A program made the position numbers and the translations under genes. From Ophelia neglecta (Eukaryota): DNA of 64,000 nt. The notes under the pieces were generated by a model. It made no database searches. It saw nothing but the letters and a program-made list of their open reading frames with translations, and had not been told where the DNA came from. Each line of letters begins with the position of its first letter. Position 1 is the stretch's first letter. Below are positions 37,945 to 57,142 of the stretch, one piece after another. The stretch lies in contig OZ260662.1 of NCBI GenBank assembly GCA_965285935.1, positions 100,812,001 to 100,876,000 on the forward strand, in the 5' to 3' direction.

Positions 37945-40900
37945 TCATGCATCATCCTCCAAACAAAATAGACTGCCCTGACTACCTGTAGGGAGGAAAA
38001 CAATACTCACAATATAGGTATACGTGGCTGATTGTTATTATAGCGCTCGGTTTGTTTCAAAATTACAGAGTACAGAGACAAACGTACTCAATGCTCTTAT
38101 TGGGTAGTGGTTGACTGTATATTATGATCATGGTCATACGCTCTAAGTACAGAAAAACCTGCCTTATATACCACCGCAGACCACATGTTAATTCAGTAAA
38201 CCAATATGAGTAAATTATTGCTTAATTTAAATGTCAAAATAATCTGTCTGAACAGACCATCTGCATGACCAGACTAGTAATTTTTTAGTCCTCTGGGTGG
38301 TCTTAATGCACAAGTTTTATTGTAACACCAATATTCAGTTACCAATCTGATCAGATTGAAACAAAGCTATACCAACTTGATGATTAAATATGAAAGTCGA
38401 GGTTCATATATATACCGTGTATTTGTCGAGCTCTTGCGCACAACCTCGAGTAGCCTCCAGTGCCAACCAGGTTCTGGAAGGCTTGGTTCCACCAGTCTAT
38501 CATCGAACTGCCATATCGGGCCATCACGGCAGAGCCTGAAGTACTCAATTAACAGCAATCGAGTTTAATGACACGTTTATGGGTATGTCGTTTTTGCTAT
38601 ATATGATAGCAAATTGAACTACTGGATAGTATGATACTGCACTAAGGTCTTGTTTCTTGAAATAAGTCAGTTATATATTCATTAGTCCTGATTCCTAAAT
38701 AAGTACTTCTCCCTAGTCAAGCACTTTCGAAGGATAAATGACGCCACCTTGATTTGCTCATTATGTTTGTTGATTATACCATAAGAGAAGGCGGGCTCTG
38801 CTTTCTGCCTAACGTGAGTAGTACACGAGAATCTAGGTTCTATTGCCTCCATCCCCATTTGGTGTCTTTCAGCTGAGTTGAAGACATCAACCGTGAGTAA
38901 AGCATCAACCCATAAAGGTAAAATTTAGGTTATCCATAACGCATAAGCATGTACTTTTAGCAATATTAACCAAATCGTAGTGCGGGTTTTTAATAGCTCT
39001 ATGAACGTATATTACAAAACATAGGTTATAAAACTCTCTTCGCCCTAACCTTGGCGCAAATATATAGAGTCCGCCCCACCCCCACCCCCACCCCTTCCGA
39101 ATCTCACCTGCCCAGTCCTGAGTCCAATTATGAGTTTTCGGTGTGTCTTGGAGATGTGTGGGATATAGTCTCCGGGCTGGTTACCAGTAAAAACACTCTG
39201 TCAGGGCAGACATTGCTTACCTAACGCCCAACCGTCGATAAAACCTAACAAACAACCATTCAAACATGTAACTTGAGCTTGTAACATTCAAGATGAATTA
39301 TTTTGATGTTGCATGAGAAATACTGACATGAGATCAAATATATTGACATGAAATGCTACAGAATATGATATGGCTCATTCTTGCTTCAGAAAACCAAAGT
39401 AATAAAGAATTTTTGTCTCATTTCTAATAGGTGGGAAGTAGTACAAATGGGAAATAATAAAAAGTTCAATTCTGCATTGCACGTGAATAAACTTTGTATC
39501 TCTTAATATTGATAAGGGTAAAAGATAAATCAACATACAATTATGTTAACTGTCACATTAACTGAACAATAGCGGTGAAGCTAGAATTTGTCTAACCTAA
39601 TTTCCGGCCAGTAAGATTGTAGGGCCTTACTGGTATTTCTCCCGCTCGATAGTGCAAAGCCACTTGAAAGTTTGGGCTGAATCCCAAAGTGAAGTTAAAG
39701 CTATTCAGTCTCTCTGGGCTTGGAAAGAGTCCTACACATCCGTCATACCAGCGATCCAACAAACCTAAGAAGGTACATGTTGTCGGAAATTAACAATTTT
39801 GAGGCATTCGGTGCAAAAATGGACAGCAGTACATTGATAACGGTAGAGAATACATTCAGAGCGAAGCGTGGATCCATATGTTAAGTATGTAGCGTTTTGA
39901 CCATTTAAACCACTTTGTTTTACTGCTTTATAATGAGATATGACAAGACTTTCATCTTCTGATTTAGCAGGCCTTTATGTTAATGTCATTGTCGTATATA
40001 GCTAACATGCATGTTAATATATATATGTGGCAAATAGAACAGAATTCAATGGATACCCTGGAATTTGTTTAGGATATATTTCCAGTGTGCCCCATGATTA
40101 ACTGCCATTATCGCGTTCGTAACATTGTGTTCAAAACTACTTACATTTCGTTTTAAAATTCAACCAACGGAAAAGGGTAGGGTAAGTATCATAGCCAGGT
40201 TTAATACCACAGTGTTAGTCTCTTTGAGCTTCGGGATAAGGAAAGAGATAGCTTGCGATAACTTATTCCTACGGGGGCAACTTATTTCTTTGTTTCATAG
40301 TTGGCAATGACTCCCAGCGTGGAATGAGTATGAAAGCCTCTCAATACAAGTTATATATTTTTGTTATTCGACTTTGGGTTTGACATTTTTGACACTATAT
40401 TTGGTTGTATACTTGTTTTTCTTAATGAAGTTGCGATTGTTGTTTTTTTGAGAGTGCGGTCGCACGTTTTCCGTGAATTCCGACTGACTAAATGGGTTAT
40501 TCTTAACCACCGAAGCTGCCTTGTCTTCAATGTGTTTTTCCTATTTGTTTTCAAACGTTTTGTGAAATGCTTACCTACACCAGGCAAATCCATATCCCCG
40601 GATGTGCTCCAGTAGTGTTGAAACGTGTCTAAGAGGTAGTGACATCTACCTGCCTGATGACATACTGTAAAATAACAGCGTGTATACATGCTTATAGGAA
40701 CCACTAAGGTATTGTATGAAGAATCAGACCATCTCTGGGCAATGAAACTGAATAAATCAAGCCCCCATGCCTCTGTCTGTGTCACAGTGAGCCTCGAGTT
40801 TGACTGTTACACAAAACGGGAGTGGATACCTGGACAAAACCAACTTATTAGTCAAGAATAATTCAATTATATCCAATATGAAAAGGCACGGCCTAGAGCT

Positions 40901-42479
40901 TTACAACCTCTTGAAACTATATCGCCGATCAAATGGCCCAAAAATACTAATATTGACATGTTAAGTAATGAATCCATAAAAACTCTATTCTCCTTGAATT
41001 GTGAAATATATCCTCCCGCAAACCATATAACGGCCCCCTATTTTCATCAATTGGCCACTGTAAAAATTGTTCGACTCTTGTTTGTCTTGTTTTTCCGCCG
41101 ATTTCAGATATGAAGCTTCAATGTCAACTTACCAGCCAGTACGACAGAAATCGCCGTGAAAATGGTTTTAATTGTCGAATACAGAGATAAAAAATGTTTG
41201 TCGATACCGCCAATGTGTAGTGGTCAGGCTAATACTCTTTGTCTTGTGAATGTAAAACTAATTGGTGTTCTCGTAGTCAGAGGTAATGAAGGTCCTGGCG
41301 CAGTTATCTCTATCTTGATCAAGGTCTGTGATACAATGAGGCCAAGTGTCGAGTATACAAAGACCTTGTTTATATCAGACATGGGTGGGCCTAGTAGACG
41401 TCCAGCACGGTTACTTCAGCGGTTACTTCAGTGTTGGTTTACACTTGGAAGGAAAACCGATCGGTGCTTATCTGCTCGCTTAAGGAAACAAATGATGTGT
41501 ATTCTAAAAAAAAAATTAGTTATTATAAAATGGGGTAACTTGGTCGATTTAAGTGGGAAGTCCATCATGCTTTCATGATAGAGGGGTGACAATATGGAAA
41601 ATGGTAGTTATTTTGCCTTCAACAATTAGACAGAAAACATAAATAACATTATTGGGAATACTTTTTTAAAATTATTTTGTTAGCCTAAAGATCATTTCAC
41701 ATGGAATCATGACTCCAAACTTGGCATTTAATACCTCTTTTTCAGAATAAAAATATATTAAAATAATTTTCTTCGGTTGAATGATGTTCATAATTACACG
41801 AGAAGAGGTAAGAAATAAACAACTCGGAAATAACAACGGGTTACCAGGACATTTTGTTGAAAACTGACTTGATATTAATCAAGGAATAGCCAAATGCCCA
41901 TAAAATATATGTTTCGCGGCTCATTTATTTCATCTTTACAGTGGAACCCCTGGTGAAAGACCACCCAAAAATGGCCAAAAAACCACTCTTTTTGCTAAAC
42001 GAGTTGCCCTACCTGCCATGTATTTCAACCCCTGATGAGGGAGCTTCGGGATACGGAAAGAGATAGCTTGCGATAACTTATTCCTACGTGGGCAACTTAC
42101 TTCTTTGTTTCATAGTTGGCAATGACTCCCAGCGTGGAATGAGTATGAATGCCTCACAATACAAGTTATATATTTTTGTTATTCGACTTTGGGTTTGACA
42201 TTTTTGACACTATATTTGGTTGTATACTTGTTTTTCTTAATGAAGTTGCGATTGTTGTTCTTTTGAGAGTGCGGTCGCACGTTTTCCGTGAATTCCGACT
42301 GACTAAATGGGTTATTCTTAACCACCGAAGCTGCCTTGTCTTCAATGTGTTTTTCCTATTTGTTTTCATACGTTTTGTGAAATGCTTACCTACACCAGGC
42401 AAATCCATATCCCCGGGTGTGCTCCAGTAGTGTTGAAACGTGTCTAAGAGGTAGTGACATCTACCTGCCTGATGACATA
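37945..42479 (-). pseudogene. Pseudogene (paralog C) of the secreted solute-binding-protein family, exons 4-9 only
   Basis: Exons at 40575-40664 (duplicated at 42390-42479), 39597-39764, 39108-39244, 38813-38909, 38416-38535 and 37945-37985. Their sizes (90, 168, 137, 97, 120, 41) match the intact paralogs except a one-codon deletion in exon 4. Lesions: in-frame TGA at 39203-39201, exon-7 acceptor TGG and donor TT, a conserved Cys changed to Tyr. Exons 1-3 were not found. Confidence 0.9.
38150..38322. mobile_element. CAGTG-family MITE, degenerate
   Basis: ta-cagaaaaacctgcctta...ggtggtcttaatgcacaagttttattg-ta; lies in the last intron of pseudogene C. Confidence 0.6.
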
Positions 42480-43856
42480 CTGTAAAATAACAGCGTGTAT
42501 ACATGCTTATAGGAACCACTAAGGTATTGTATGAAGAATCAGACCATCTCTGGGCAATGAAACTGAATAAATCAAGCCCCCATGCCTCTGTCTGTATCAC
42601 AGTGAGCCTCGAGTTTGACTGTTACATAAAACGGGAGTGGATACCTGGACAAAACCAACTTATTAGTCAAGAATATTTCATTTTATCCAATATGAAAAGG
42701 CACGGCCTAGAGCTTTACAACCTCTTGAAACTATATCGCCGATCAAATGGCCCAAAAATACTAATATTGACATGTTAAGTAATAAATCCATAAAAACTCT
42801 ATTCTCCTTGAATTGTGAAATATATCCTCCCGCAAACCATATAACGGCCTCCTATTTTCATCAATTGGCCACTGTAAAAATTGTTCGACTCTTGTTTGTC
42901 TTGTTTTTCTGCCGATTTCAGATATGAAGCTTCAATGTCAACTTACCAGCCAGTACGACAGAAATCGCCGTGAAAATGGTTTTAATTGTCGAATACAGAG
43001 ATAAAAAATGTTTGTCGATACCGCCAATGTGTAGTGGTCAGGCTAATACTCTTTGTCTTGTGAATGTAAAGTAATTGGTGTTCTCGTGGTCAGAGGTAAT
43101 GAAGGTCCTGGCGCAGTTATCTCTATCTTGATCAAGGTCTGTGATACAATGAGGCCAAGTGTCGATTATACAAAGACCTTGTTTATATCAGACATGGGTG
43201 GGCCTAGTAGACGTCCAGCACGGTTACTTCAGCGGTTACTTCAGTGTTGGTTTACACTTGGAAGGAAAACCGATCGGTGCTTATCTGCTGGCTTAAGGAA
43301 ACAAATGATGTGTATTCTAAAAAAAAACGATACTTATTATAAAATGGGGTAACTTGGTCGATTTAAGTGAGAAGTCCATCATGCTTTCATGATAGAGGGG
43401 TGACAATATGGAAAATGGTAGTTATTTTGCCTTCAACAATTAGACAAAAAACATAAATAACATTATTGGGAATACTTTTTTAGAATTATTTTGTTAGCCT
43501 AAAAATCATTTCACAGGGAATCATGACTCCAAACTTGGCATTTAATACCTCTTTTTCAGAATAAAAATATATTAAAATAATTTTCTTCGGTTGAATGATG
43601 TTCATAATTACACGAGAAGAGGGAAGAAATAAACAACTCGGAAATAGCAACCGGTTACCAGGACATTTTTTTGAAAACTGACTTGATATTAATCAAGGAA
43701 TAGCCAAATGCCCATAAAATATATGTTTCGCGGCTCATTTATTTCATCTTTACAGTGGAACCCCTGGTGAAAGACCACCCACAAATGGCCAAAAAACCAC
43801 TCTTCTTGCTAAACGAGTTGCCCTACCTGCCATGTATTTCAACCCCTGATGAGGGA
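40226..43856. repeat. Tandem duplication, 2 x ~1815 bp (40226-42042 / 42041-43856)
   Basis: Near-identical copies. Junction cctgatgaggGAgcttcggg with 2-nt microhomology. It duplicates exon 4 of pseudogene C. Confidence 0.95.
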
Positions 43857-43910
43857 CAATACCTCTTATCAGACCACTTATTTGGTGGTCTCTCATGAGG
43901 TGCTCCAATG
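43753..43910. mobile_element. CAGTG-ended MITE; truncated duplicate at 41939-42042
   Basis: ta-cagtggaacccct...aggtgctccaatg-ta with TA TSD. The breakpoint of the 1.8-kb duplication falls inside it. Confidence 0.7.
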
Positions 43911-44597
43911 TACTACATTTGACATTTAATTTAGTTATTGAAAAAACAGTCTGGCGATGCATCGTTTTTTCTGGAATTTATACAACTTTGACATCATTGA
44001 ATTGCCTCATGTCAGTTATAAAAACAATTCGAACGATGAACATTATTTTTATAAAATTGTTCCTAACATGGGCCTATAATATCTAAAAAGTCCTGGGTTA
44101 AGGACTCACGTGTGTTATGTCTCCGTGCATGCATGTTAGAAAATAATAAACAGGCATGTTTTAAAATATATTAATAAGTGATTTGAGTAAAAGAGTAATT
44201 ACAGATTTTATCTATGTGAAAAAAATTAATATTCCAGACAATGAGCTCACAACCCATGTAATAATCCGAATAGTTTAATGCAAAGTGGAGAATATGTAGA
44301 ATAATAACTATTTTCACAATAACAAATAAAGAAAACAGCCAGAACACAAAGAGATAGTATCAGATTTTTAGTTCCTAAGATGGGGGGGGGGGGGGATCCA
44401 ACTACTCTATAGTAAAATAGCAAAACTAAGACCTCTGAAGATATGGGTTTTAAAGAGGCTTATACAGGTTCGCTAGAATGATCTATGTTCAACATTTCCA
44501 AGTAAATACTACCCCTAAGGCCCCTGGGATTGTCTGGCTTATACCAGTCTGGTACACTGAAGGCGGACCACGGCGTGTGTAACACTGTTACCTGACA

Positions 44598-47500
44598 ATG
44601 AAGACCATTGTTTCCTCAATCGTAATGCTACTCGCTGGTAAGTATGTTAATCAAAAATTTTACTCTACCTAAATTTATTTGATCGATGCAGTTCCAATAA
44701 TGTTTAATTCATGAGTAATTTTGTTAATGCAGTGCCATGGGAAGAGATACAGATTTTAATGAATAAATTGGCATTGGCTTTACGATGCGGTAACTAATGG
44801 CTACTGTAGAGCGCTCTTAATCGGAGTTGACAAGTACATAATTCTCAGAGCCGCAGCATTATTAATATTGAAAATTGTTGTTTTTCCATGTCATCAACGA
44901 TCCTTTTTATTGTCTATGATACTTAAATTTAAGGTATTGTTTGATGAATCTACTTGTTTCAGCATCAGATGCACTTGGTCACAATATGAATGGCGCCAGG
45001 GGTCGCTACCAATATGCAAAGGAGCATCAAAGACGAGACGACGCTGATCAACAAATAGAAGAAAACGAGGAGAAACCCCCGGTTCAGAACAAACATAGAG
45101 CGCATAGCAACAGCGAACAAGGAAGGGTCTGGCATTTCCAGGTCGATCCCTACCACTCACCTTGGGAGTATATGCAAGTTATAAATATTTTCCTTTCCTA
45201 TACACACCTTGATGTTTAACTGTAATGGTTGTACCATTTTACTGCTCATCGTATTTTGTATAAAAGACAATAGTCTAATAATCGCGAGGGTTTTATTAAC
45301 TGCCTTTGTATATATGGCGCCTATATTAACCTTAAACTATGGCAAAGAACTAAATATACTTACATTACTTACTTAAAATCATAATGTTTCCAAGAGGTTT
45401 AGGTGGTAAAATTGGATCGATGGAATATTAAAAAGAGTACTTCACAAAAAGCTACGAAACGAGTTAAATTAATAACGAAATATAACATTTACTGCCACTG
45501 TACTGTAAGTGGTACTGTTAGTTTCGTATTATTATATTAATTGTCGTTGTTCCATTGTCGGGATATAAGGGTCTAAATGGACGTTTGTCTACGATAAGAG
45601 CAACATTTAACTTTAATGTTTTTAATAATGCTTCAAGAAGTATGTACATACACAATCATGATGACATAAACAGTCCTCAACAACTAAAGAGACTCCTATC
45701 ATTTGACCTGATATATTTATTTACTGAGTCATATGTGGCAGGCCAACGCGTACCTTGTAGTGGTGGTACGTGTACCGATACTGCGATGGTTTTCCCCTTT
45801 AGCTAGTATTAGACACATATGCATTATGTCTTGCATTATATTCTGTTTTAAATTTCCAGAGACGATGAGGGGTTTGTAAAAGGGATCACCATAGATCTCA
45901 TCCTAGAAGGTAAAATCTCCTCGGGTATCCAGTGCATCTAACTCTGATGCTAATTTCTGTAAAAAGAAAACAACATTAAAATATCAGTCCCTGATGACAC
46001 ACTCTGAACACTTATTAGATCATTGTCATACCATTTTATCACGACGTGCAATTAATTGTCGGCTTGCTAATAGGCTTTACCATTAAGTGTATGCTTAAGT
46101 ACACTACAAGAAGTAAACGTTTGTTATGACTAGGCTGTTTGTATGTTAATTTTGTGCCCTGCATTCGAATATTTTTCCTTTAACGTTTATTAAATATGAA
46201 AAGCTTTATAATGTAAACTCGTGTACTGTAAATACCATTTTTGTATTTTAATGGTGCGGTTATGGCCCAGTCACAATGTCGGCGATCTGTCGGGGATTAG
46301 TTTTGGCCGGGGGTCGTCGTAGAAAATAAAGAATCCTTGAACAATCCTAGCAATAATCCTAATAAAAGTCGAGCAGTCACATTGTCTGAGATTTTTTCAA
46401 GGATTTTGACCCGGTTTTGTCGAAAAATCGTGGGATTAGCCTCCGATCGCCCCCGACTGCATCGGAGGCGATCGGAGACGATATCTGCGAGCGTCTTTTC
46501 TTTTAATTTTTCCCCCACCACGGCGATTTACTACGATTCCACCGTACGATTCGTCGGAGACGATCACAGAAAGCGTCGGAGGGCGCCTCCGATTCAGTCG
46601 GAGGGCGCCGGAGACTACTCGCAGACATTTAATCTCAACCTGAATTTCCAATCCCACACAGAATCTTGCGACTAGTCTCAGATTATTCGGAGGACGCCTC
46701 CGATTAATCGGCATCGTAGGTCATCGGAGATTGTGTCTGGGATGCCCAAAATGGGTGAAAAATCGTGCGAGCAATCTTCAAATTTTAAGTTCAAAGTTGG
46801 GGACCGCGACGGGTGTTGCGATGCCTAAAAAATCTGCGACAAGCCGCAGGCGTCCGGAGAGCGCCTCCGACGGGTGAAAAATCGTGAGATCTGTCTCAAG
46901 ATTTTGTTAAAATTTCCCGGGTTTTACCCATCGCCGACGCATCGCAACTGATTTGTGACTGGCCCATTATGTAGAACAGCTTACATTGTTAATTTATTTT
47001 TTGATGTCAAAGTTCTAATTGTTTAGCATTCCAGTAGTCCTTACAGGAGTCCAATAAAGAATTTTTAATATATTTTTTCTTCGCACAGTCTGTCGCCAGG
47101 CCGGTAGGAAGTGTCACTTCATAGTGGATACTCACCTCCACTGCTGGGACACATCCGGTGACACACCTTACCCTGGTGTTGGTAAGATGCATTTTGTCAA
47201 CAGAGCTGGCGCATGTTCTTTCAGACATAATTAAAAATCATACCACAACATTCCACACGATTCAAAATGTTATACTTCTTATAATTTTCAAAACAAAAAG
47301 CCTGGAATAATTGCTTGAAAGAAATTTTAAATTTGCACTATGCATTTTTTTATTTTAGAATAACGAGTACCTTGCGCCACATTGGAACATGAGGAGCATA
47401 CTGATATTAGTGCTCTTGTACCATATCATTACTTCATTTTATTATAGCAAAAAATCTCAATGACAGGTAGTGGATCTCTAATTAAATATGCATCAATTTA

Positions 47501-49504
47501 ATACATATTAAATATTCAAATATTATATACCCAATGCAACACCCACCCGTTCCTCAGGAAAACGTCCAAGCAGAAGTCCATTTGTATTCGATGTTTAAAA
47601 AGAACTATTCATGTGATTAAACTTTTATTGCAACACAACAAACTGCTATCATATTCTTTGGTGCCACTGGGCATTAGTTAAACTAAATTTTTGTTCTGGT
47701 TATATAATGTTTGTGGAAACTGACGTCTACGGAATTATTCGTAGCGATTATGTTGGCAATAAAAATTCTGCACTGTAGGTTTATTTGACAGCTGGTATGA
47801 CGGATGTATAGGCATGTTTGGAGCCCCGGAAAGGCTAAACAGTTTTAATTTTACCGTGCCATTTACGCCTAATATAGAGATAGCTTTGCACTATCGCTTC
47901 GGAGAAATACCTATGATGCCCCACAATCTCACTGACAGGAAAATAGGTAGGGAAATAAAACCAATGTTCTGTATTATACGTTATCTGTGTGATTCTTTAG
48001 TTAATATATGAACTAGTTTATTTTTTAATGCTGCATAGATAGTTGAATATTCCTAAATTGAATATCCTAAGATTCCTTATTAAGCATTAGGTGCAACTCC
48101 GACTCGCATGATCAAAGGCTGTTGACTACTTCTCATTGCAAAATATCTCAATTATCATTTTTAATTTTTTCATTTGCATTAAAAATTCTTTTTTGTTTGG
48201 GAGCTGGCGAGTGATGTATTTGGGCCTGTGGCTACATGTTCCTGGTGTTTTCAGAACGATATATTGGAATATTTTTAATTAATACTTTTGCCATACTTTT
48301 TCCGATTAACGTCAAATAAAAAAAATGCAACAAAGACGATCTGTTACGATTTTGTATAACATGACAACATATGTCTACATTCGAATTGTATGGTCGTAAT
48401 TTTTCATCATATAACTTTATATTTGTATGCTCATATCACCCCCGCCCCCAAATGAGAAAATATGTCCCCTAAATTCTACCTGCGGTTCACTGAGAAGTTC
48501 TATTACACAGGTTTTATCAAGGGTTACGCGGGTGGTAAAGATTGTCTGGCCAGGCAGAGTGTGTTCACTGGCAACCAACCGGGATACTACACCCCAGTGA
48601 TGTACGAGACTCATAGACAACTGATAACGGGACTGAGAACCGGAGAGGTAGGTTCTTGAACAGTTGACCTAAACAGAATGACGCAAATATGCCATCAAAC
48701 AAACTGCAGGAGCGCAAATGTATACAAAGTTATTTCTGGAATTAACGTAAGTGTAGCCCGTCTGGCTCAAAGCATTTATCAAAATATATACATGTGCCTT
48801 AAATTTTCATCAACATCCCAAACTCTCTTTAAACAAAACCTAAAAGAGCACGTGTTGACTTCTTTTGACAGAGCGTTAATAACGTCCATGAACCATCTGA
48901 CAATGTCTTTTTCTTCTTTAGATTGATGCTATACCTTATTCTAACATTTTCGACCCTTCAAAACGACACCAGATGGGGATACAAGCCACCGAGCCTTGGT
49001 TTTCTTGTACTACTCAGGGTAGGCAAGAGCAAGCGTCAGTCGCGATTTCGCACACATTGAAATAAATCTTAAATGTGTGTGTCAGTATTCAGTTTCATAA
49101 TGGAAGTTTCAGTATGTAGTGTATATTCATTCTCTTAATACGTATCCGTGCTAAATGTATCCAATGAATTAACCCCCCCCCCCCCCCTTCCTCCTACAGG
49201 AGCCTCAGTGATGGCGCGTTACGGAAGTCCAATGGTAGACTGGTGGAACAAGGGCTTCCAGAATCTAGTGGACAGTGGGTCCTACTCTAGTTTGTGTACC
49301 CAGGCCAAAGCAGTACACGGTCAGTAAGGTTGTACTTACAAGAGTTAAACAGTGGCTTCAAAACCTTGTCGCTTTATATGTCTCAATCAAAATAAAGCAC
49401 AAAATTTGGATGACGATAGCATAATATTGGCTTTTCAATTATATACTTATCCAGGAGACCGTGTCAAGATATTTTGTTTGGAGGATGGGGAACTGCAATC
49501 GTAA
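44598..49504 (+). CDS. Secreted bacterial-type family-3 solute-binding protein-like (PBP2 fold), paralog A, 321 aa; join(44598..44637,44963..45173,45860..45909,47089..47181,47779..47946,48511..48647,48922..49018,49200..49319,49455..49504)
   Basis: Signal peptide MKTIVSSIVMLLAASDA. SBP3-like motifs: PWEYIDDEGFVKGITIDLILEVC, PERLNSFNFTVPF, LTDRKIGFIKG, YETHRQLITGLRTGEIDA, WNKGFQNLVDSGSY. Exon sizes and phases match paralog B. Intron 2 has a GC donor. AATAAA near 49753 and 49762. Confidence 0.88.
46263..46966. mobile_element. PIF/Harbinger-like non-autonomous element (704 bp) in intron 3 of paralog A
   Basis: TIRs tggcccagtcacaa / ttgtgactggccca flanked by TTA on both sides. The GC/CpG-rich interior has repeated tcggag/ctccga motifs. 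Confidence 0.8.
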
Positions 49505-51644
49505 AACAAGGTGGAAGTAAACCAGACTGCACTTACACAGCACAAAGTTATATGAACAAGTAAAGCTATACTATAACACGTATCTTCCTAATGTCTCATA
49601 TTAAATGAATGTAATTATATTTTATGTAGAATATGCTTTTATGTTCATGCAATGTCTGGCTCCAATTATGCAAAAAAAGGCCCAAATTAGAACATTTTCG
49701 ACTTATTGTGGGTTTATGACGTTCTTCTCTCATCAAGCAATCACTATGCTGGAATAAAATTAATAAATGGCATCATATTTGATTTCTAGATCTGTCGCGT
49801 TTTTCCTAAGATTTAGTGTATCGTGTTTACTTGATAGAACAAATGCTAGTTCTTCAGTGTGTAAATATCAAATTTCAATTTACTGGACTTATTTGCCCCA
49901 AAGAGGAAGCATGTAAACTGCTACACAGAAATGAAAGAAGAGCCCCTAAGCATAGGATGCGTGATTGTCTTGCAGTAAAGATATCTCCTTGTGTCCTTCC
50001 CCAACCAGCAAATAGGTATTTCTATGGTGAGTAAAAAACAGCCTTGAATTAAAAGTTGTCAATGGCTCCTGGCCCTTTTGTTACGAGATCAACTTGAAAC
50101 TTCATGTGCCTGAAAACTGTTTGAATTCTACTTGTCTAAGCGCTTTCGAAATGTCTGAATCTGCTATGGAAAAGCCAGGTTATCGATGCCAAATATACCA
50201 GACACAGTCAGTGTCTAATAGCAGGCCTTATGTTATATCAATGATAAACACTTGGAAAATACACAAAATGATATATATGCCACTTGATATATTATAAACA
50301 ATGATTCTTTTAATCTACTCGATAGCTGGATTTTTTATTGATTTTTTATTGATTTTGTGTCAGGCAAAGGAAATTTCTCTGAAATTCGAATCTATCGAAA
50401 AATAAAAAATTCAAAGACAGGTCACCTCGTTTCAGTATCATAATTAATCATATTCAACAAAATAACTATTTTCTTTTCAGGCTAGAGCGCACCACCCCAT
50501 TTTAAGTTGGTTAAAATGAATAATTGCTAAGACCTCGCTCCTAAATGGTCTAAGGGGGTATATATCAAAGACAGTAGGATGGTAACAAGACAGTGCTTTG
50601 GCTTGTCACTTGATACTCCCATATTTAACATCTTACACTGCTCATTGTGACCTAGATGAATTACGGTAACAATTATGTAGCCAATCAATTGCCTTATCTC
50701 TAGTGACCCTCGGAATGGTTTAAACAGAACTTGGCGACCAGCCGTTTGAGACAGATAACCGACCTACATAAACGGTTAGTTCAACTGTTAAGTTCTGAGG
50801 AGCGACCAAAAGCCGAATTCGGAGGGGTCGCCTGAAAGGTAATACAATAAATCCAGCTGCTGCAAATAGTGATTCGTGTCACAAATATGCTGTATTCGGT
50901 TTATCTCACTTAGCCATATTTTCAGTCGGAAATCACCTTCCGATCTACCTTAGCGATGGAATATCATGTCGATAATATAATGGGTATTGATTCATTTTCC
51001 AACATTTGTCCTAATTACTTGATTTCTAACGGTAGTGTCAAAAACACATAAATTGAAATATCAACAACTGCAAATAAATTGCAGAGAAATGAACGTAAAA
51101 GAATCAGTTATAAACCGACATATGAGAGAAGTCCTCTTTGATGTCAATAATACCAGACATTAAGCGAGTCAGTATTCAATGCACAATGCGGACGAAAAAT
51201 GCCACCCAAGGAGTCCGAAAGCAATAAGTCAGAAGAGTGTTGCAGTAGTATAAACGAGTGTGGACGATTGTGTTTAAGGTCCTGCATTTCATTGATTGAA
51301 AGGGATTGGTTTTCTTTTCCTTTAATGGTCAGATTTTTTGAAAATGTATGTATATTTCGTATTTCTAATTTGTGTGACCACTAACATCCAGAACTTGGAG
51401 AACTATTTCAGTTATGCTAGTTATGGGTAAGTGATTCTTACTCGATATTAATCATGTGCCGGGCATGGATGTTCTCTAAAGGTTTTGCTCTACAACGGTC
51501 ACAGGGTCGCCCCTAACCAACTTCTAATCTTATCATTATATAATAAATTATCAAGATCCATGATTGATATTTTCCAAACGTTTGTCCGGCCTTTATCAAG
51601 ACAAATTCCATGGCTACTAGAATTACACGCTGGCACTCGCCTCA

Positions 51645-51652
51645 TATAAATA
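51645..51652 (+). promoter_or_regulatory. Putative TATA box of paralog B
   Basis: tataaata ~70 nt upstream of the GCCATG start. Confidence 0.45.
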
Positions 51653-51715
51653 CCTCTCAGACAGTTCCCACTCTCAGAAGGACTTGATTCACGGGTGCGA
51701 CAGCAAGACTTGGCC

Positions 51716-54700
51716 ATGACTACATTTTTAACGGCAATTGTAATATTCCTGGCTGGTGAGTTTAACACTTTGTATTATAGTGGTGAGGTTCTAACTGGGT
51801 AAGTTGTCATTACTGATATAACAAAACATTAAATTGGAATAACAAAATAAAAATAAATGACAAATGAATATTATGATATATATACATATAGATACATAGT
51901 CAATATATGCATGATTATAAAAAAGTGTACTAAGCTCTTTAAGTCATCGGAGAAAACTAGGCTAACTTCATGGAGCTCTTAATCACTAGAAACATACCAA
52001 GCCAAGTGTTCTTAATATGCCTCATTCTGCCTTACCATCACTCATCCGATGACGGGACAGCATCATAATGCTTCATTGTATGATTATGTAGTTTGCATTG
52101 TAACATAGTTTGTGTCCTGTGTTTCCAGCCTCAGCTGTGCATGCCGATCATTGGGCTCGCTTTGGCCATTCACGTACCCAAGAAACCCCTTTTCGTCATG
52201 GACATTCGGGAAATGGTCGATCTCACGCCGAACGCACAAATGGCCATCAGGAACACAGCCACTCTGAGCACAGTCATGAACACCACCCCCACTCAGATGA
52301 TGACCACGGTCTAACCAGAGTAATCCACGCCTACATCCACTCCCAAGGCGGCTACGACCATACTCATTCAGGGGGCCCAACCCCGCCAATAGGCGATCAT
52401 CACCATCATTACCATGGTCCAGTTCATGTTCACAACCATATGGATTCAGGGGAGTCTTCGGAGGAAGTTGAAATTGAAATAGATCCCGAGGCCAGCAAGA
52501 ACGAAGAAAAACAAGCATCTTCTGAGAATGATGAGAGAGTGTGGACTTTCCAGGTTGGCCATTTCCTCGCTCCATGGGAGTACATGTAAGGACTGTATAT
52601 ACATCATCATTCTTTGCCTTGAAAGTTTCCTTCTATTGTACATATACTTGTGCATTACGTTTAATATGTGTAGAACCAAAAGCAATAGTAAAATTGAAAT
52701 CAAAGAAAAATCGTGGTCGAAAATCTTTGCAAGAAGCTGAATACATCCCTAGTATAATGACGTCTTGCCGAAGAGCAGAGAAAAACGTTAAGGTGGTTTG
52801 ATTTATGCAGGCTCCTCGTCGCCGCCCTATTATACTATTAAATATGCATCTGTGTGTTTGCATCAGATTAACCTTTCTCGGTTTAAAAACTTATTTTTTT
52901 GACATTACAAACGGAAAATAGAATATTAGCAAGTCACAGTCCTTGACAGGCGTAAATATCACTGCATACATAAGTGTTTACACAATTTAGTACCTGCCGC
53001 AGGCGCCGAGTCACGCAAAAATATGAATTATACTTATGAATGCGGTGCAGTATTTTCGTTCGTAATTTATATGAATCAAATAAGTATTAAGCCAGCTCAA
53101 TCTAGCAAGTGTTAACCAAATAAATGGATTTGTCTTGAAGAGGAGTGCGATTAAAGCCCGGATTAATCTGTCTAGCATAAACATCCAACTTTCCTCTAGC
53201 CTGAACATATAAAAAGTCACAGTGTTTTTTAACTCCAATTACATTTAGAGAACACACATCGTTCTCCCACTTTAAATTACAATATTAGCCAGAATCCATC
53301 CTGAGAGGCAAGACACCTAATCTGAACTGGGCCGAAAGGCATCTGTGAGAACAATCCAACATTTAACATACGGTTCAAACTCATTGGAATACTTCATGAA
53401 CAACTGGACCTTCATTTTATCTTGTCAACTACATTTTTTTGTATTGTGCGTCATCAATACGATGCATGACCGCGGAATGACATTTTTAAAACTTCGACTC
53501 CACTGCCATTCATCGAAGACACATATTTAATACCTCAATATATTTTGTTTCCTTTCTCTATCAAAGAGATGATGAGGGGTACGTGAAAGGCTTCCATATA
53601 GATCTCCTGCAAGCTGGTAAGTGTTACTCCCTACATGCATGACGAGTATTTTATAAAAGTTTAAAGTAAACCAAACATTCTGATACAGGGCATCTTTGCA
53701 CAATAAGACTGCAAAACGAATAATTTCACTGGCTTCAATAATATTTGGGTCATTTAGATTCCCTTATTATTAAATATTTCCATTAAATTGGACATTAGAT
53801 GTCTTCTTACCTTTATGGAATTACTCGATACATTGTCAATATATACTGGAATACTACAAGAACTGCAACCTTTATTATTCCCTAGTTCCGTTGGTGTGAA
53901 TAATCTAACATCTAAATAGGTCTGATCAAATAAATATCACCTTATAACAATTCCAATGATAATAAGTAAAACGTTGACCTATTGCATGTCCCGCCAAAAC
54001 ACAACCCAACAAGGCAGACGTGAGAATGTGAAATTGGCCGTTTTATGTCTTAACGTAACCTTTTGATAAATGATTAACGAAATGTACTGATCGGTACGTA
54101 GGAACGTAGTGATTACCATCTAAAAGATGCTAAATTGTTTGTCGGCATTTCAACTGACACGCTGACTGAACCATTTTAACAATCAAGGAATCAATCAAAG
54201 TTACAAACCGGCATAGTGCTAAATGCAATAAGGCATAACTGAGCGTCCGTATCGAAGCCTTTAGGTCCGTTACACATGTACACCGGGTGAAACTGACCCA
54301 TATTTGGGCGATAACCTCTTCACGACCTTTACGCTGGGAGTAGGAATCAACGAGCAGCATTCACCATGACAGGCGATACAACACAATCCTGCTAGCTCAA
54401 TTTTGGCCAAACTTTTTGGGGATTTACTGTGCTTAATATTGTATATATTGTAAGTAAATTTAAGGTTTCAATTGTTTGTTTTTATTCTTTTTTTTTTGCA
54501 TACGATCAATGTGTTATATACGAGGGGAGGGGGGGGGGCAGATTTGCTTCACAACACCAAGGTCAAGGATTATTTTACTTTATTATGTTTCTCTCTGTGC
54601 TTGTGACGTTACCTACGTTAAGTTAAGCCGTTTTCGCAAGACGACGCCATAACAAGGACCTCATTCCTCAGCTTAGCATTGTATATATCAAATACGAGCC

Positions 54701-57142
54701 TCTCAGTGTTCTCTTTTTTAACATAAAAATGCCGTCAGCAGAAGTTCACTCTGAAAGTTTGCTTCATTTATTTTTCGTTTTGTAGTCTGCCACGAGGCCG
54801 GTAAGAGATGCCACTACATGCTGGATGATGTTCAACACTGCTGGGATACGTCCGAGGAGATGTCTCTCCCGGGTATTGGTAAGATATGTCAACAGCCTTT
54901 GGGAATTCAAATGTAGCGCGTGCTTCTACTTTTAATTATAAATAACAAAAAATGTCTATCTGAAAACAAAATTTACACTTAATGCAATACATTGCCTGTA
55001 CATTGCAATACATTGCCTGTAAATGTGGCAACCACAAATATGAACGTTCCTTGATATTGGTCCTTTTTGAAACTACCTCTTAAGCCTCCTCGTATTAAGG
55101 CTCCTGGTAATGCTATTACAATGACACTATGAGCTTATACTCCTTTGTATTTGTCGGATATTTCTAAATAATGATTCAGCTATGTTTTGACATTTAGCTC
55201 GCAAACTGAACGAAAGACTTGTCTTGTCAAAGTCCAATTGTGAGTTTCGGCTAGGTTATGTAGGAGTATCTTACATGTTCTAAACCACTCCACTGTAGGG
55301 TTATTGGACCGCTGGTACGACGGCTGTATCGGAATGTTTGCCAGTCCAGAGCGACTGAATAGTTTCAACTTTACAATCCCATTTACCCCAAATATGGAGG
55401 TTGGCCTTTACTATCGATCTGGAGAGGTACCAATGAATCCCCAAAATCTCACTGGCAAGAAAATAGGTAGGATATATATACTAATTTGCGTTGGTAACAC
55501 CGGTACTTTTCATTCCATATTACAAAAAAAGTAAATTTAAATATTCCCTTTTTAATTATTATATATCGTTTTACCATTACTAAGCACTAATTACGCTGTT
55601 TCCGCTGAGAAATCAAATCCTTTTATCAAATGTCAGAGGCAGCTCCACCTCGGTTATTTTGACTGAGTTCTAATAAAACGTAGCCTACCTATTCTTAGCT
55701 ATTGTGTTGTTATAATACAGGTATTATCAAATTACTGGCTGGCGAGGAATGTCTGTCCAGACAGGGCGGGTTTACAGGTAACAAGCAGGGAGAATACATT
55801 CCTGTCATATACGACACACCCACGCAACTCATCATGGGACTTCGAAAAGTAGAGGTAAGTTCTTATTAGAATATTCGTCGAGTGAGACCTGATTATTATG
55901 ATGATATTGCAGAATATAGCAGATATAGCGCGATGGCCGATCGGTCCAGACTATACGTCCAGGGTATCGCTTGCGGACAGAGGGTTTTATGCGTTTCCAT
56001 TGGCAAGGTCGTTAATAACAATTTGGCGAGTGGATACCTGGCGGACAAGTGAATAGTCGTCTTTGAAGCTAAATGCGGCTGTTCCTTGTTTGATATCTGT
56101 GGCGTTGAGATGGTTCAGGAACAAAATGTATAAACAGGTCTAGGTGATTTAGGGGTAATTTTTACGGTTTTGCGAGCAGACCTAGACTAGACTGGAGCAA
56201 GATGTACATTTACCTTCAAAAACGCCAAAATGGTAAAATCAAAATATGCAGTTGCAGCAATTTAAACGTTCTGAACCTGTTTCGAACAGATAGTCGTCTT
56301 CTTTCTTTGTCTCATACTGATATATTACCAAATATTAGGAGAGTTCACGTATTTATCATTGACGCTTCACTGCAAAGCTAATATCAAAATATTAATTCCA
56401 GATTGATGCTTTTCTTGCCCCAAATGCATTCGACGCGGCAACACAGCAACATATGGGGCTAGAAGCCGTCGAACCTTGGTTCTTCTGTACTACTCATGGT
56501 AAAGGACTTTACGCCTTTATATAATCTATCAATTTGGTAATTTATGTAATTCCCCAATCTTATATTAATGTTGCATGTTTCCATTTCTACCATTCCAGGA
56601 GGCTCAGTGATGACGCGTTACGGCAGTCCACTCATTGACTGGTGGAACGAGGCCTTCCAGAATCTGGTGGACACTGGAGAATACTCTAGACTGTGTTCCA
56701 GGGCCAGAAGAATACACGGTCAGTTAATGTCACACACTCTGTATATTCCTATAACTTGGTCTTCTACGTCAATAACTTTATATCATTATTTTTATTTAGG
56801 ATTAAATAAATTGTAGCGCAATTGGTTAGATTAATGGCTGGTGTTGGGTCCCTTCGGCGTAAAATAATTTAAATATCCAAATAAACGAGACGAAAATAAA
56901 AGCTCTCGCCACACCGCTTTTTGTCCCGAGTGCGAATTATAGACTAATTTCTCAAGAAAATAGTAAATATTTACATCTAATTAGATAACAAATGGGATAA
57001 AAGTATTTTAGACTTCCTTATAGTTATCTTACTAGAGGTATTGTATGTGTTATTTATGACACTTTTATTTTCTTAATCATCGGCGACTGACTTTCTTTCA
57101 GGTTCCCGAAGCAGAGTGTTTTGTTTGGGGGATGGCATATAG
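51716..57142 (+). CDS. Secreted solute-binding protein-like (PBP2 fold), paralog B with His-rich N-terminal extension, 399 aa; join(51716..51755,52129..52585,53567..53616,54786..54878,55299..55466,55721..55854,56402..56498,56599..56718,57102..57142)
   Basis: All introns are GT-AG and the frame is open throughout. Signal peptide MTTFLTAIVIFLAASAVHA, then a His-rich tract and an acidic linker. SBP3-like motifs follow: PWEYIDDEGYVKGFHIDLLQAVC, PERLNSFNFTIPF, LTGKKIG, YDTPTQLIMGLRKVEIDA, WNEAFQNLVDTGEY. AATAAA near 57293. Confidence 0.9.

What the first reader, a model, noticed from the sequence alone, without database searches (positions are those of the whole stretch)
52129..52585. His-rich plus acidic N-terminal extension unique to paralog B: candidate metal-binding or pH-responsive module on a solute-binding domain
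Seen: exon 2 is 457 nt in B versus 211 nt in A. After the signal peptide B has 26 His in 98 residues (HQEHSHSEHSHEHHPHSDDDH, DHHHHYHGPVHVHNH), then an acidic linker (DSGESSEEVEIEIDPE...SSENDE). A has a shorter polar tract with a dibasic RR. Established: HxH and poly-His tracts bind Zn, Ni and Cu (ZnuA loops, ZIP ectodomains) and cross-link invertebrate biomaterials. Inference: a bifunctional secreted protein coupling metal binding or matrix anchoring to small-ligand binding, arisen by expansion of one exon.
Basis: partly seen in the sequence, partly recalled or inferred. Interest (0 to 1): 0.75.

Follow-up and report, generated by a model that had tools for sequence, protein, structure and literature searches.

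The report
Histidine-rich tail on secreted binding protein
One exon of a worm-like animal's gene adds a floppy tail, rich in histidine and acidic residues, to a secreted bacterial-type amino-acid-binding protein; the tail is shared by a whole gene subfamily and probably binds metals or senses pH, which is untested.

Summary
The sequence facts hold. Exon 2 of paralog B (52129-52585, 457 nt; 211 nt in A) is open in one frame. After a signal-peptide end it encodes 26 His in 98-99 residues, a 31-residue acidic/Ser block, then the first strand of an SBP_bac_3 domain.

- **Not unique to B.** Seven more paralogs on the same chromosome carry a homologous His-rich exon 2. cDNA-like contigs of other species show His/Asp/Ser-rich tails before the same domain, one with about 186 residues of (HHDSDES)n.
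- **Not a B-specific expansion.** A tree puts a His-rich paralog outside A plus the B group in 270 of 300 bootstraps, so A probably shortened.

The tail is coding: conserved acceptor, in-frame indels, 7 invariant His columns. It evolves fast, and its N-terminal part looks near-neutral.

Metal or pH function stays inferred.

Seven paper searches found no description of this animal family.

The scan had noted the gene cluster on this same window (s1-750695), not on other DNA.

The parts
51716..51755 (+). Exon 1 of paralog B: start codon plus 13 hydrophobic residues (MTTFLTAIVIFLA) and 1 base; n- and h-regions of the signal peptide
   Evidence: ATG, phase-1 GT donor CTG|gtgagt; A has an equal 40-nt exon 1 at 44598-44637; splice table
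52129..52585 (+). Exon 2 of paralog B (457 nt): the finding
   Evidence: canonical acceptor and donor, one open frame from 52131
52129..52145 (+). End of the signal peptide, (A)SAVHA, with the predicted cleavage before DHW
   Evidence: Read from the sequence. The same motif sits at the start of exon 2 in 7 paralogues. No signal-peptide predictor was run.
52146..52442 (+). His-rich tract, 99 residues with 26 His (26%), 12 Gly, 9 Ser
52197..52304 (+). Variable sub-tract, about 36 residues (HGHSGNG...HSDDD). It is absent as one in-frame 108-nt gap from the 96%-identical copy B' and is reshaped by indels in other paralogues.
   Evidence: Three nonsynonymous variants (R35S, N37Y, E50G) lie here in DNA runs.
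52305..52442 (+). Conserved core of the tail (HGLTRVIHAYIHSQGG...DHHHHYHGPVHVHNHM). 7 of its 20 His-bearing alignment columns are His in all 7 B-group paralogues.
52443..52535 (+). Acidic/Ser block, 31 residues with 13 Asp+Glu, 6 Ser and four S-x-E motifs
   Evidence: The block is conserved in paralogues. Similar SEEEVEVEVDD-type blocks occur in P0024 and P0026.
52536..52583 (+). First strand of the solute-binding domain (RVWTFQVGHFLAPWEY)
   Evidence: Matches family-profile positions up to 82. Aligns with homologues.
53567..53616 (+). Exon 3 (50 nt). My first boundary, 53519, was wrong and was corrected with homologue guidance.
54786..54878 (+). Exon 4, with three of the eight family-invariant cysteines
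55299..55466 (+). Exon 5 (corrected end), WYDGC...SPERLNSFNFT with the invariant Arg
55721..55854 (+). Exon 6
56402..56498 (+). Exon 7 (IDAF... with the invariant Asp)
56599..56718 (+). Exon 8
57102..57142 (+). Exon 9: (G)SRSRVFCLGDGI plus the stop codon. It carries the last invariant Cys. The CDS totals 1200 nt, i.e. 399 codons plus stop.
   Evidence: The pattern HG-x3-4-[IV]-x-C-L is seen in homologues. Its own profile score is not significant.
44963..45173 (+). Exon 2 of paralog A (211 nt): short polar/acidic tail, 4 His in 51 residues, RR, apparent GC donor (AT|gcaagt)

Best explanation
Exon 2 is a genuine coding exon of a nine-exon gene. The gene encodes a 399-residue secreted protein.

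Layout of the protein:
- a signal peptide;
- an about 130-residue tail that is disordered by composition, made of a His-rich tract followed by an acidic, Ser-containing block;
- a disulfide-rich amino-acid-type solute-binding clamshell (SBP_bac_3 kind).

The tail is not B's invention. It is the hallmark of a subfamily of at least 8 paralogues on this chromosome. Compositionally similar tails precede the same domain in other marine invertebrates.

Its sequence and length change fast through in-frame indels. Its composition and a core of His positions persist.

Most likely mechanism (inferred, not shown):
- The tail acts as a multivalent, low-specificity binder of divalent cations. Imidazoles would hold Zn, Cu or Ni. 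The acidic, possibly phosphorylated block would hold Ca or Mg.
- It also acts as a pH-dependent charge switch. By calculation the His tract goes from about -2 at pH 7.4 to about +19 at pH 5.5, next to a block of about -11.
- Either property would tether or concentrate the ligand-binding domain in an extracellular matrix, or condense it in secretory granules.
For: Shown:
- All nine exons have GT-AG sites with matching phases, and the CDS is 1200 nt.
- Each of exons 2-8 matches, in order, a profile built from 13 natural homologues: e5 5e-24, e8 3e-17, e4 2e-10, e6 2e-7, e2 8e-7, e3 1e-5, e7 6e-4.
- 10 of 10 of the homologues tested pass PF00497, at 33-54 bits against a 26.4 cut-off.
- The nearest solved structures are amino-acid-binding domains: GlnPQ 6h30 at 5.9e-18, STM4351, ArtJ.
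- The homologue alignment has 8 invariant Cys, one Arg and one Asp. All are present in B's exons.

Tail is translated:
- The acceptor sits at the same place in all paralogues. The signal-peptidase motif lies in the first five codons of exon 2, so a downstream acceptor would remove it.
- Exon-2 lengths of 457, 349, 400, 325, 325, 325, 466 and 211 nt are all 1 mod 3.
- I count at least 7 indel events in the alignment, and all are in frame.
- 7 of 20 His columns are invariant.
- dN/dS is 0-0.2 for the acidic block and 0.33-0.36 for the core against L031 and L032.

Family feature:
- Tails have at least 13% His in 8 of 9 own-genome genes with a tail, and in 4 of 10 other-species sequences. One is 31% His and 32% Asp+Glu over 186 residues.
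- Those sequences lie on contigs of 1.1-1.8 kb with uninterrupted ORFs. This fits cDNA origin, which is my inference.

Chemistry:
- 26% His, 11 HxH, the computed charge switch, and the disordered side of the charge-hydropathy plot.
- Established: His-rich invertebrate proteins respond to pH and Zn (passages of PMC9999432).
Against: - No RNA run of this species was found. The three holders are DNA contigs of one sample, so splicing and expression are unproven here.
- The N-terminal half of the tract looks near-neutral: dN/dS 0.73 and 1.21 against L032 and L033. There are three nonsynonymous variants, and 36 residues are missing in the 96%-identical copy B'.
- Pairwise counts for the core are small and do not exclude neutrality, e.g. 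12.5 synonymous and 28.5 nonsynonymous differences against L035.
- Five chromosome-7 paralogues have no tail. A and A' have a short one with few His. The tail is therefore dispensable for the domain.
- The tail matches no Pfam family and no PDB sequence. No orthologous exon-2 fragment was found by word search in the 83-264 aa range.
- No metal, matrix or tissue datum exists.
- B itself could be scored against Pfam only exon by exon. The best was exon 5, at 11.8 bits against 26.4.
Confidence: 0.45

Rival explanations
1. The tail is an evolutionarily labile disordered spacer with no specific binding role. Histidine richness would be compositional drift of a low-complexity region, tolerated because only the signal peptide and the clamshell matter.
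For: - The variable part has dN/dS 0.7-1.2 and many indels.
- B' lacks 36 residues.
- There are nonsynonymous variants in the DNA runs.
- The tail is absent from 5 chromosome-7 paralogues and short in A and A'.
- Other-species tails range from 0 to 31% His.
Against: - His richness persists in 8 paralogues whose binding-domain exons have dS of about 0.4-0.58.
- It persists in L038 and in 4 of 10 other-species tails that barely align.
- 7 His columns are invariant, and the acidic block has dN/dS 0-0.2 against L031-L033.
- Drift alone does not predict repeated enrichment of His together with Asp, Glu and Ser.
Confidence: 0.22
2. The tail is a pro-region or cargo. It would be cut off after secretion and would act on its own as His-rich peptides, for example antimicrobial or metal-chelating ones. 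The clamshell would serve only as carrier, or would act separately.
For: - The (HHDSDES)n tail of contig L047 contains two RRHKR stretches, which look like furin-type sites (the site consensus is recalled).
- A has a dibasic RR.
- L033 has a stop at the last codon of exon 2. If expressed, it would yield a free tail.
Against: - B's own tail has no dibasic or R-x-K/R-R site (sequence).
- The junction ...SSENDERVWTF is conserved without a cleavage motif in 7 paralogues.
- The L033 stop may simply mark a pseudogene.
Confidence: 0.08
3. The His tract is not part of the mature message. B would be unexpressed or decaying, or would use another acceptor.
For: - No RNA evidence.
- Several in-phase AG sites lie inside the exon, e.g. 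before 52297.
- Neighbour C is degenerate, and L033 carries a stop.
Against: - B has nine intact exons with canonical sites and no stop.
- The upstream acceptor is conserved in all paralogues, and the signal-cleavage motif depends on it.
- Uninterrupted tail-plus-domain ORFs occur on short contigs of other species.
Confidence: 0.08
4. The coding feature is the 182-codon antisense open frame at 52087-52632.
For: The frame is open on the minus strand. A like frame exists in the L033 locus.
Against: - His codons read backwards (RTG) cannot give stops, so such frames are expected by-products.
- The sense frame joins a signal peptide to a conserved domain. The antisense frame has no such context.
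Confidence: 0.01

Closest known systems
Bacterial family-3 solute-binding proteins (Pfam PF00497 SBP_bac_3; GlnH/GlnPQ SBD, ArtJ, HisJ/LAO)
   Same: The domain after the tail. Natural homologues score 33-54 bits and hit GlnPQ, STM4351 and ArtJ structures. The Arg of the ...ER.NSF.F... motif and an Asp are invariant. Their ligand-contacting roles are recalled from bacterial proteins, not tested here.
   Different: This is an animal gene with 8 introns. It has 8 invariant cysteines, no partner permease is known, and it carries a long His/acidic N-terminal tail. B itself was scored exon by exon only.
Uncharacterised animal SBP_bac_3 proteins ('ABC transporter arginine-binding protein 1-like' of Lytechinus; LOC115918889 of S. 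purpuratus; Owenia fusiformis CAH1789007.1; Priapulus and Saccoglossus entries)
   Same: Same family by sequence, with the same cysteine pattern.
   Different: The sea-urchin, hemichordate and priapulid forms start with a hydrophobic membrane-anchor-like stretch and have no His-rich tail. The Owenia form has a short tail with 7% His.
His-rich metal-binding stretches of bacterial zinc SBPs (ZnuA loop, ZinT N-terminus) and vertebrate histidine-rich glycoprotein / histidine-rich Ca-binding protein (all recalled, none retrieved here)
   Same: Dense His with HxH or HH, or His mixed with acidic residues, attached to or near a binding protein. B even has an HHPH string.
   Different: No sequence relationship was detected. 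The position differs: an N-terminal tail on an amino-acid-type SBP, not a loop on a metal-type SBP. Metal binding is untested.
His-rich structural proteins of invertebrates (Nereis jaw protein NVJP-1, squid beak HBPs, preCol termini)
   Same: His content is similar: 26% here against 27 mol% in NVJP. Acidic residues are present. pH and Zn responsiveness is established for those proteins (passages of PMC9999432).
   Different: Those proteins are Gly-rich (20-36%) and repetitive, and have no globular ligand-binding domain. B's tract has 12% Gly and no tandem repeat.

Membership tests
Pfam PF00497 SBP_bac_3 | Whole-protein score above the curated cut-off (26.4 bits) | tested here: inconclusive
   B could only be scanned exon by exon. 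Its best score was exon 5, 11.8 bits, E 0.2. 10 of 10 full-length natural homologues tested pass at 33.3-53.7 bits. The joined B protein was not built or searched, by rule.
Pfam PF00497 SBP_bac_3 | Colinear match of the whole domain | tested here: met
   Exons 2-8 hit positions 30-82, 84-99, 101-129, 132-186, 195-229, 233-262 and 266-303 of a 313-position profile. The profile was built from 13 natural family members, 9 of them among the 10 that pass Pfam.
Pfam PF00497 SBP_bac_3 | Ligand-contacting Arg and Asp of amino-acid-binding members | tested here: met
   The invariant R193 and D278 columns of alignment A1 correspond to SPERLNSF and IDAF in B's exons 5 and 7. Their role is recalled, not shown.
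Pfam PF00497 SBP_bac_3 | Works with an ABC permease | not testable with these tools
   No partner was sought. None is expected for a secreted animal protein.
Known His-rich metal-binding segments (ZnuA/ZinT/HRG type) | High His density with HxH/HH motifs | tested here: met
   26 of 99 residues are His, with 11 HxH and 4 HH positions.
Known His-rich metal-binding segments (ZnuA/ZinT/HRG type) | Sequence homology to a described family | tested here: not met
   Exon 2 has 0 Pfam families. Its only PDB match has E = 1. The word search gave no hit.
Known His-rich metal-binding segments (ZnuA/ZinT/HRG type) | Measured metal binding | not testable with these tools
   Needs protein chemistry.
Invertebrate His-rich structural proteins (NVJP, HBP) | Gly/His-rich tandem repeats (GGH, GHG-type) making up most of the protein | tested here: not met
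   12% Gly, and no repeat beyond a 9-bp unit x2.2. The protein is mostly a globular domain. The criteria come from passages of PMC9999432.
Invertebrate His-rich structural proteins (NVJP, HBP) | Location in a hardened or secreted material | not testable with these tools
   No expression or proteome data were found.

The most novel reading that the evidence does not exclude
The His/acid tail is a metal- and pH-switchable anchor. It would fix an amino-acid-binding clamshell in the animal's cuticle, mucus or tube. In this reading, secreted tailed forms and the membrane-anchored forms of other phyla are two solutions for the same extracellular capture or sensing layer. That layer would take up dissolved amino acids, or metal-amino-acid chelates. 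The hypervariable tail would tune where and when the layer assembles.
Probability: 0.12. Interest if true: 0.8.

Novelty: new variant of a known kind. Interest (0 to 1): 0.45.

Why it matters
Stand-alone bacterial-type binding proteins in animals have no assigned function. A tail kept by composition across paralogues and species, on the secreted forms only, is one of the few handles on where and how they act.

If the tail binds metals or switches with pH, it gives three things:
- a testable route to the localisation of the family;
- a purification handle for the native proteins;
- a natural example of a disordered metal or pH module fused to a ligand sensor.

If it is only a drifting spacer, the finding is ordinary. 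In that case the interest lies in the gene family, not in this exon.

Tried and rejected
**Boundaries corrected.** My first boundaries for exon 3 (53519) and exon 5 (55493) read into introns. They were corrected with homologue guidance. The searches therefore carried 9 intronic residues at the query's end, and their hits matched residues 1-62 at most. The first dN/dS for the domain exons and the first tree were redone, with the same result.

**Led nowhere.**
- RNA evidence: no RNA run was found. Read laying showed only DNA contigs.
- Word searches were thin. P0010 gave 2 proteins. Alignment A1 gave 7. Exon 2 gave none. That blank covers only proteins of 83-264 aa and says little.
- The representative search gave 67 hits with at most 62% identity, so this species' own proteins are not visible there. 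Its top hits P0001 and P0002 are giant bacterial repeat proteins matching only residues 4-54. I set them aside as unrelated.
- My regex for the exon-2 end was wrong and found nothing. One search also found nothing until the pattern was relaxed.

**Paper searches.**
- Seven searches gave no paper on this animal family.
- Searches also listed nothing on it.
- Searches were badly designed: generic terms swamped the listing, so they show little.
- I saw listings and abstracts only, plus passages of PMC9999432.
- Supplements were not asked for. Proteome tables in supplements of worm jaw, tube or mucus studies could name such proteins, and I could not see them.

**Considered and rejected.**
- DNA microsatellite origin of the tract.
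- The antisense ORF as the coding feature.
- Homology of the tail to any Pfam or PDB entry.
Full report
**What is there.** The window is AT-rich animal DNA (GC 0.32-0.41). The stretch 52129-52585 lies between ttccag|CC and ACAT|gtaagg. It is open only in the frame that starts at 52131. Its 151 codons read, in order:
- SAVHA;
- a 99-residue tract with 26 His (26%);
- a 31-residue block with 13 Asp+Glu and 6 Ser;
- RVWTFQVGHFLAPWEY.

At an assumed 2.5% background the binomial tail is about 2e-19. The tract is not a DNA repeat: only a 9-bp unit x2.2 was found. It uses both His codons, 16 CAT and 12 CAC.

**Gene model.** I used comparison with paralogues and with natural homologues. B has nine GT-AG exons:

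| Exon | Coordinates |
|---|---|
| 1 | 51716-51755 |
| 2 | 52129-52585 |
| 3 | 53567-53616 |
| 4 | 54786-54878 |
| 5 | 55299-55466 |
| 6 | 55721-55854 |
| 7 | 56402-56498 |
| 8 | 56599-56718 |
| 9 | 57102-57142 |

The total is 1200 nt, which gives 399 residues. Two of my first boundaries were wrong and were corrected. Exon 1 gives MTTFLTAIVIFLA. The c-region of the signal peptide and the likely cleavage site (SAVHA|DHW) are the first codons of exon 2. I read this by eye, as no predictor was available.

**The domain.** Scanned one by one against Pfam, only exon 5 gives a weak SBP_bac_3 hit (11.8 bits, E 0.2). A search of 1.84 billion representatives with exon 5 gave 67 hits at E up to 0.001.
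- 10 of 10 natural homologues tested pass PF00497, at 33-54 bits against 26.4.
- One of them, P0010, hits amino-acid-binding structures: GlnPQ 6h30 at 5.9e-18, STM4351 at 3e-10, ArtJ.
- A profile of 13 such proteins matches B's exons 2-8 separately and in order, with E from 5e-24 to 6e-4.
- The alignment has eight invariant Cys, one Arg and one Asp. All are in B's exons.

Named relatives come from the annelid Owenia fusiformis, sea urchins, Saccoglossus and Priapulus. Earlier notes of this scan call the genome an annelid's. I did not test that beyond the Owenia hit.

**Not unique to B.**
- In the whole genome, exon 5 finds 21 matches: 15 on contig C2 and 6 on C7.
- Exon 2 finds 9 matches at 7 loci, B included.
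- I could delineate exon 2 in 15 genes.

| Group | Genes | Tail |
|---|---|---|
| His-rich | B, B' (L031), L032, L033, L035, L036, L037, L038 | 14-22% His over 87-144 residues |
| Short | A and A' | 4 His of 51 residues in A |
| None | five C7 genes | no tail |

- For L043-L045 I did not locate exon 2. For paralog C of the window no exon 2 is recognisable.
- B' is 96% identical to B but lacks 36 residues as one in-frame gap.
- The seven B-group copies share a core, (H)HPHSD..HG.T.VIHAYIHS.GG...HHHH.H.P.HVHN.M, followed by DSGESSEE....

**Other species.** Uninterrupted ORFs on contigs of 1.1-1.8 kb encode a signal peptide, a tail and the same domain:
- P0010: 22% His over 94 residues.
- P0073: 22% His, 44% Asp+Glu.
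- P0019: HHDSESDD-type tail.
- P0024, P0026 and P0049: mainly acidic tails.
- Metagenome contig L047: 186 residues of (HHDSDES)n with 31% His.

Of 10 such tails, 4 have at least 13% His. I set the tail limits by eye. The echinoderm, hemichordate and priapulid forms instead begin with a hydrophobic anchor-like stretch.

**Direction of change.** I built a neighbour-joining tree from per-exon aligned positions of exons 3-8, with distances summed over exons and no joined sequence. It places L038 (His-rich) outside A/A' plus the B group in 270 of 300 bootstraps. It places A outside the B group in 292 of 300 (261 and 294 before the boundary correction). L038's tail shares ordered motifs with B's: HSRAQ, HH..TD..H, HA.[IV]H and TPTPP. 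One loss in A is therefore more parsimonious than two gains.

**Constraint.**
- All exon-2 lengths are 1 mod 3. I count at least seven indel events in the alignment, and all are in frame.
- 7 of 20 His-bearing core columns are His in all seven copies.
- dN/dS against B, from small counts, was as follows.

| Region | dN/dS against B |
|---|---|
| Domain exons | 0.16-0.33 |
| Acidic block | 0, 0.14, 0.21 (L031-L033); 0.64-0.71 (L035-L037) |
| Core | 0.33, 0.36, 0.48-0.51; 3.4 for L033 |
| Variable part | 0.16, 0.73, 1.21 |

- These pairwise values do not by themselves exclude neutrality for the core.
- L033 carries TAA at the last codon of exon 2.

**Expression.** No RNA run holds the locus. The three runs that do are contigs of one DNA sample. 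They cover the introns, show no intron-skipping joint, and list no indel inside exon 2. They show five differences there: R35S (two bases of one codon), N37Y, E50G and I87R. Splicing in this species therefore rests on sequence logic and on the cDNA-like contigs of relatives.

**Mechanism.**
- The tail falls on the disordered side of the charge-hydropathy plot.
- With textbook pKa values, the His tract goes from about -2 at pH 7.4 to +8 at pH 6.5 and +19 at pH 5.5. It sits beside a block of about -11.
- Four S-x-E motifs lie in the acidic block. That these are secretory-kinase sites is recalled.
- His-rich invertebrate proteins are known to respond to pH and Zn (passages of PMC9999432).

I therefore favour a multivalent cation-binding, pH-switchable anchoring or packaging tail (0.45). 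The rivals are:
- a drifting spacer (0.22);
- a processed pro-region (0.08);
- a non-expressed or skipped tract (0.08);
- the antisense frame (0.01).

**Novelty.** Seven searches returned no paper on this animal family or its tails. Searches also listed nothing on it. Searches were poorly designed and show little. The tail has no Pfam or PDB relative. I class it as a new variant of a known kind: a His-rich low-complexity module on a known binding fold.

Noticed in passing
L033 (G000:C2:98842000-98851999), minus strand, end of exon 2: This paralogue has the richest tail (32 His in 144 residues). It has TAA where the others have TAC, at the last full codon of exon 2, and it has lost the alternative GGGA|gt donor. 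It is either a young pseudogene or a free-standing tail peptide.
   Followed up: partly
window 52305-52535 versus L032 and L033: Synonymous divergence of the exon-2 core and acidic block between B and L032/L033 is 0.03-0.19. That is far below the 0.55-0.58 of exons 3-8 of the same gene pairs. It suggests gene conversion of the 3' half of exon 2.
   Followed up: no
window 38400-57142 versus G000:C2:101.70-101.75 Mb: The C-A-B gene trio of the window recurs about 840 kb away in inverted order (B' L031, A' L034, a fragmentary C' L012/L020). Domain dS between B and B' is about 0.1, so this is a recent inverted segmental duplication.
   Followed up: partly
window 38387-43000, minus strand: Paralog C looks degenerate. 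It has an in-frame stop in its exon-6 match, a one-codon gap in exon 4, and no recognisable exon 2. Its 5' part (exon-1-like to exon-4-like) is tandemly duplicated about 1.8 kb apart (40576-40662 and 42391-42477).
   Followed up: partly
window 45173/45174: Paralog A's exon 2 appears to end at a GC donor (AT|gcaagt). An in-phase GT donor lies 6 nt upstream. A' shows that GGGA|gtatat donor.
   Followed up: no
L047 (Ga0181508_1246604, 1661 nt): A cDNA-like metagenome contig encodes the same domain behind about 20 tandem HHDSDES heptads. Two RRHKR stretches interrupt them, which are possible furin-type cuts.
   Followed up: partly
window 52087-52632, minus strand: A 182-codon antisense open frame covers the whole exon. 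It is probably a by-product of His codons, whose reverse complements cannot be stops.
   Followed up: no
P0001, P0002: Giant bacterial proteins (2507 aa, Verrucomicrobiota MAG; 2572 aa, Saprospiraceae MAG) match exon 5 in 17 and 14 separate stretches; for P0001 the best stretch covers only query residues 4-28. This points to a repeated WYDGC-like module in bacteria.
   Followed up: no
alignment A1; P0054, P0064, P0066, P0074-P0076: The animal family has eight invariant cysteines. It comes in two architectures: secreted with a tail, or with an N-terminal hydrophobic anchor (sea urchins, Saccoglossus, Priapulus).
   Followed up: partly
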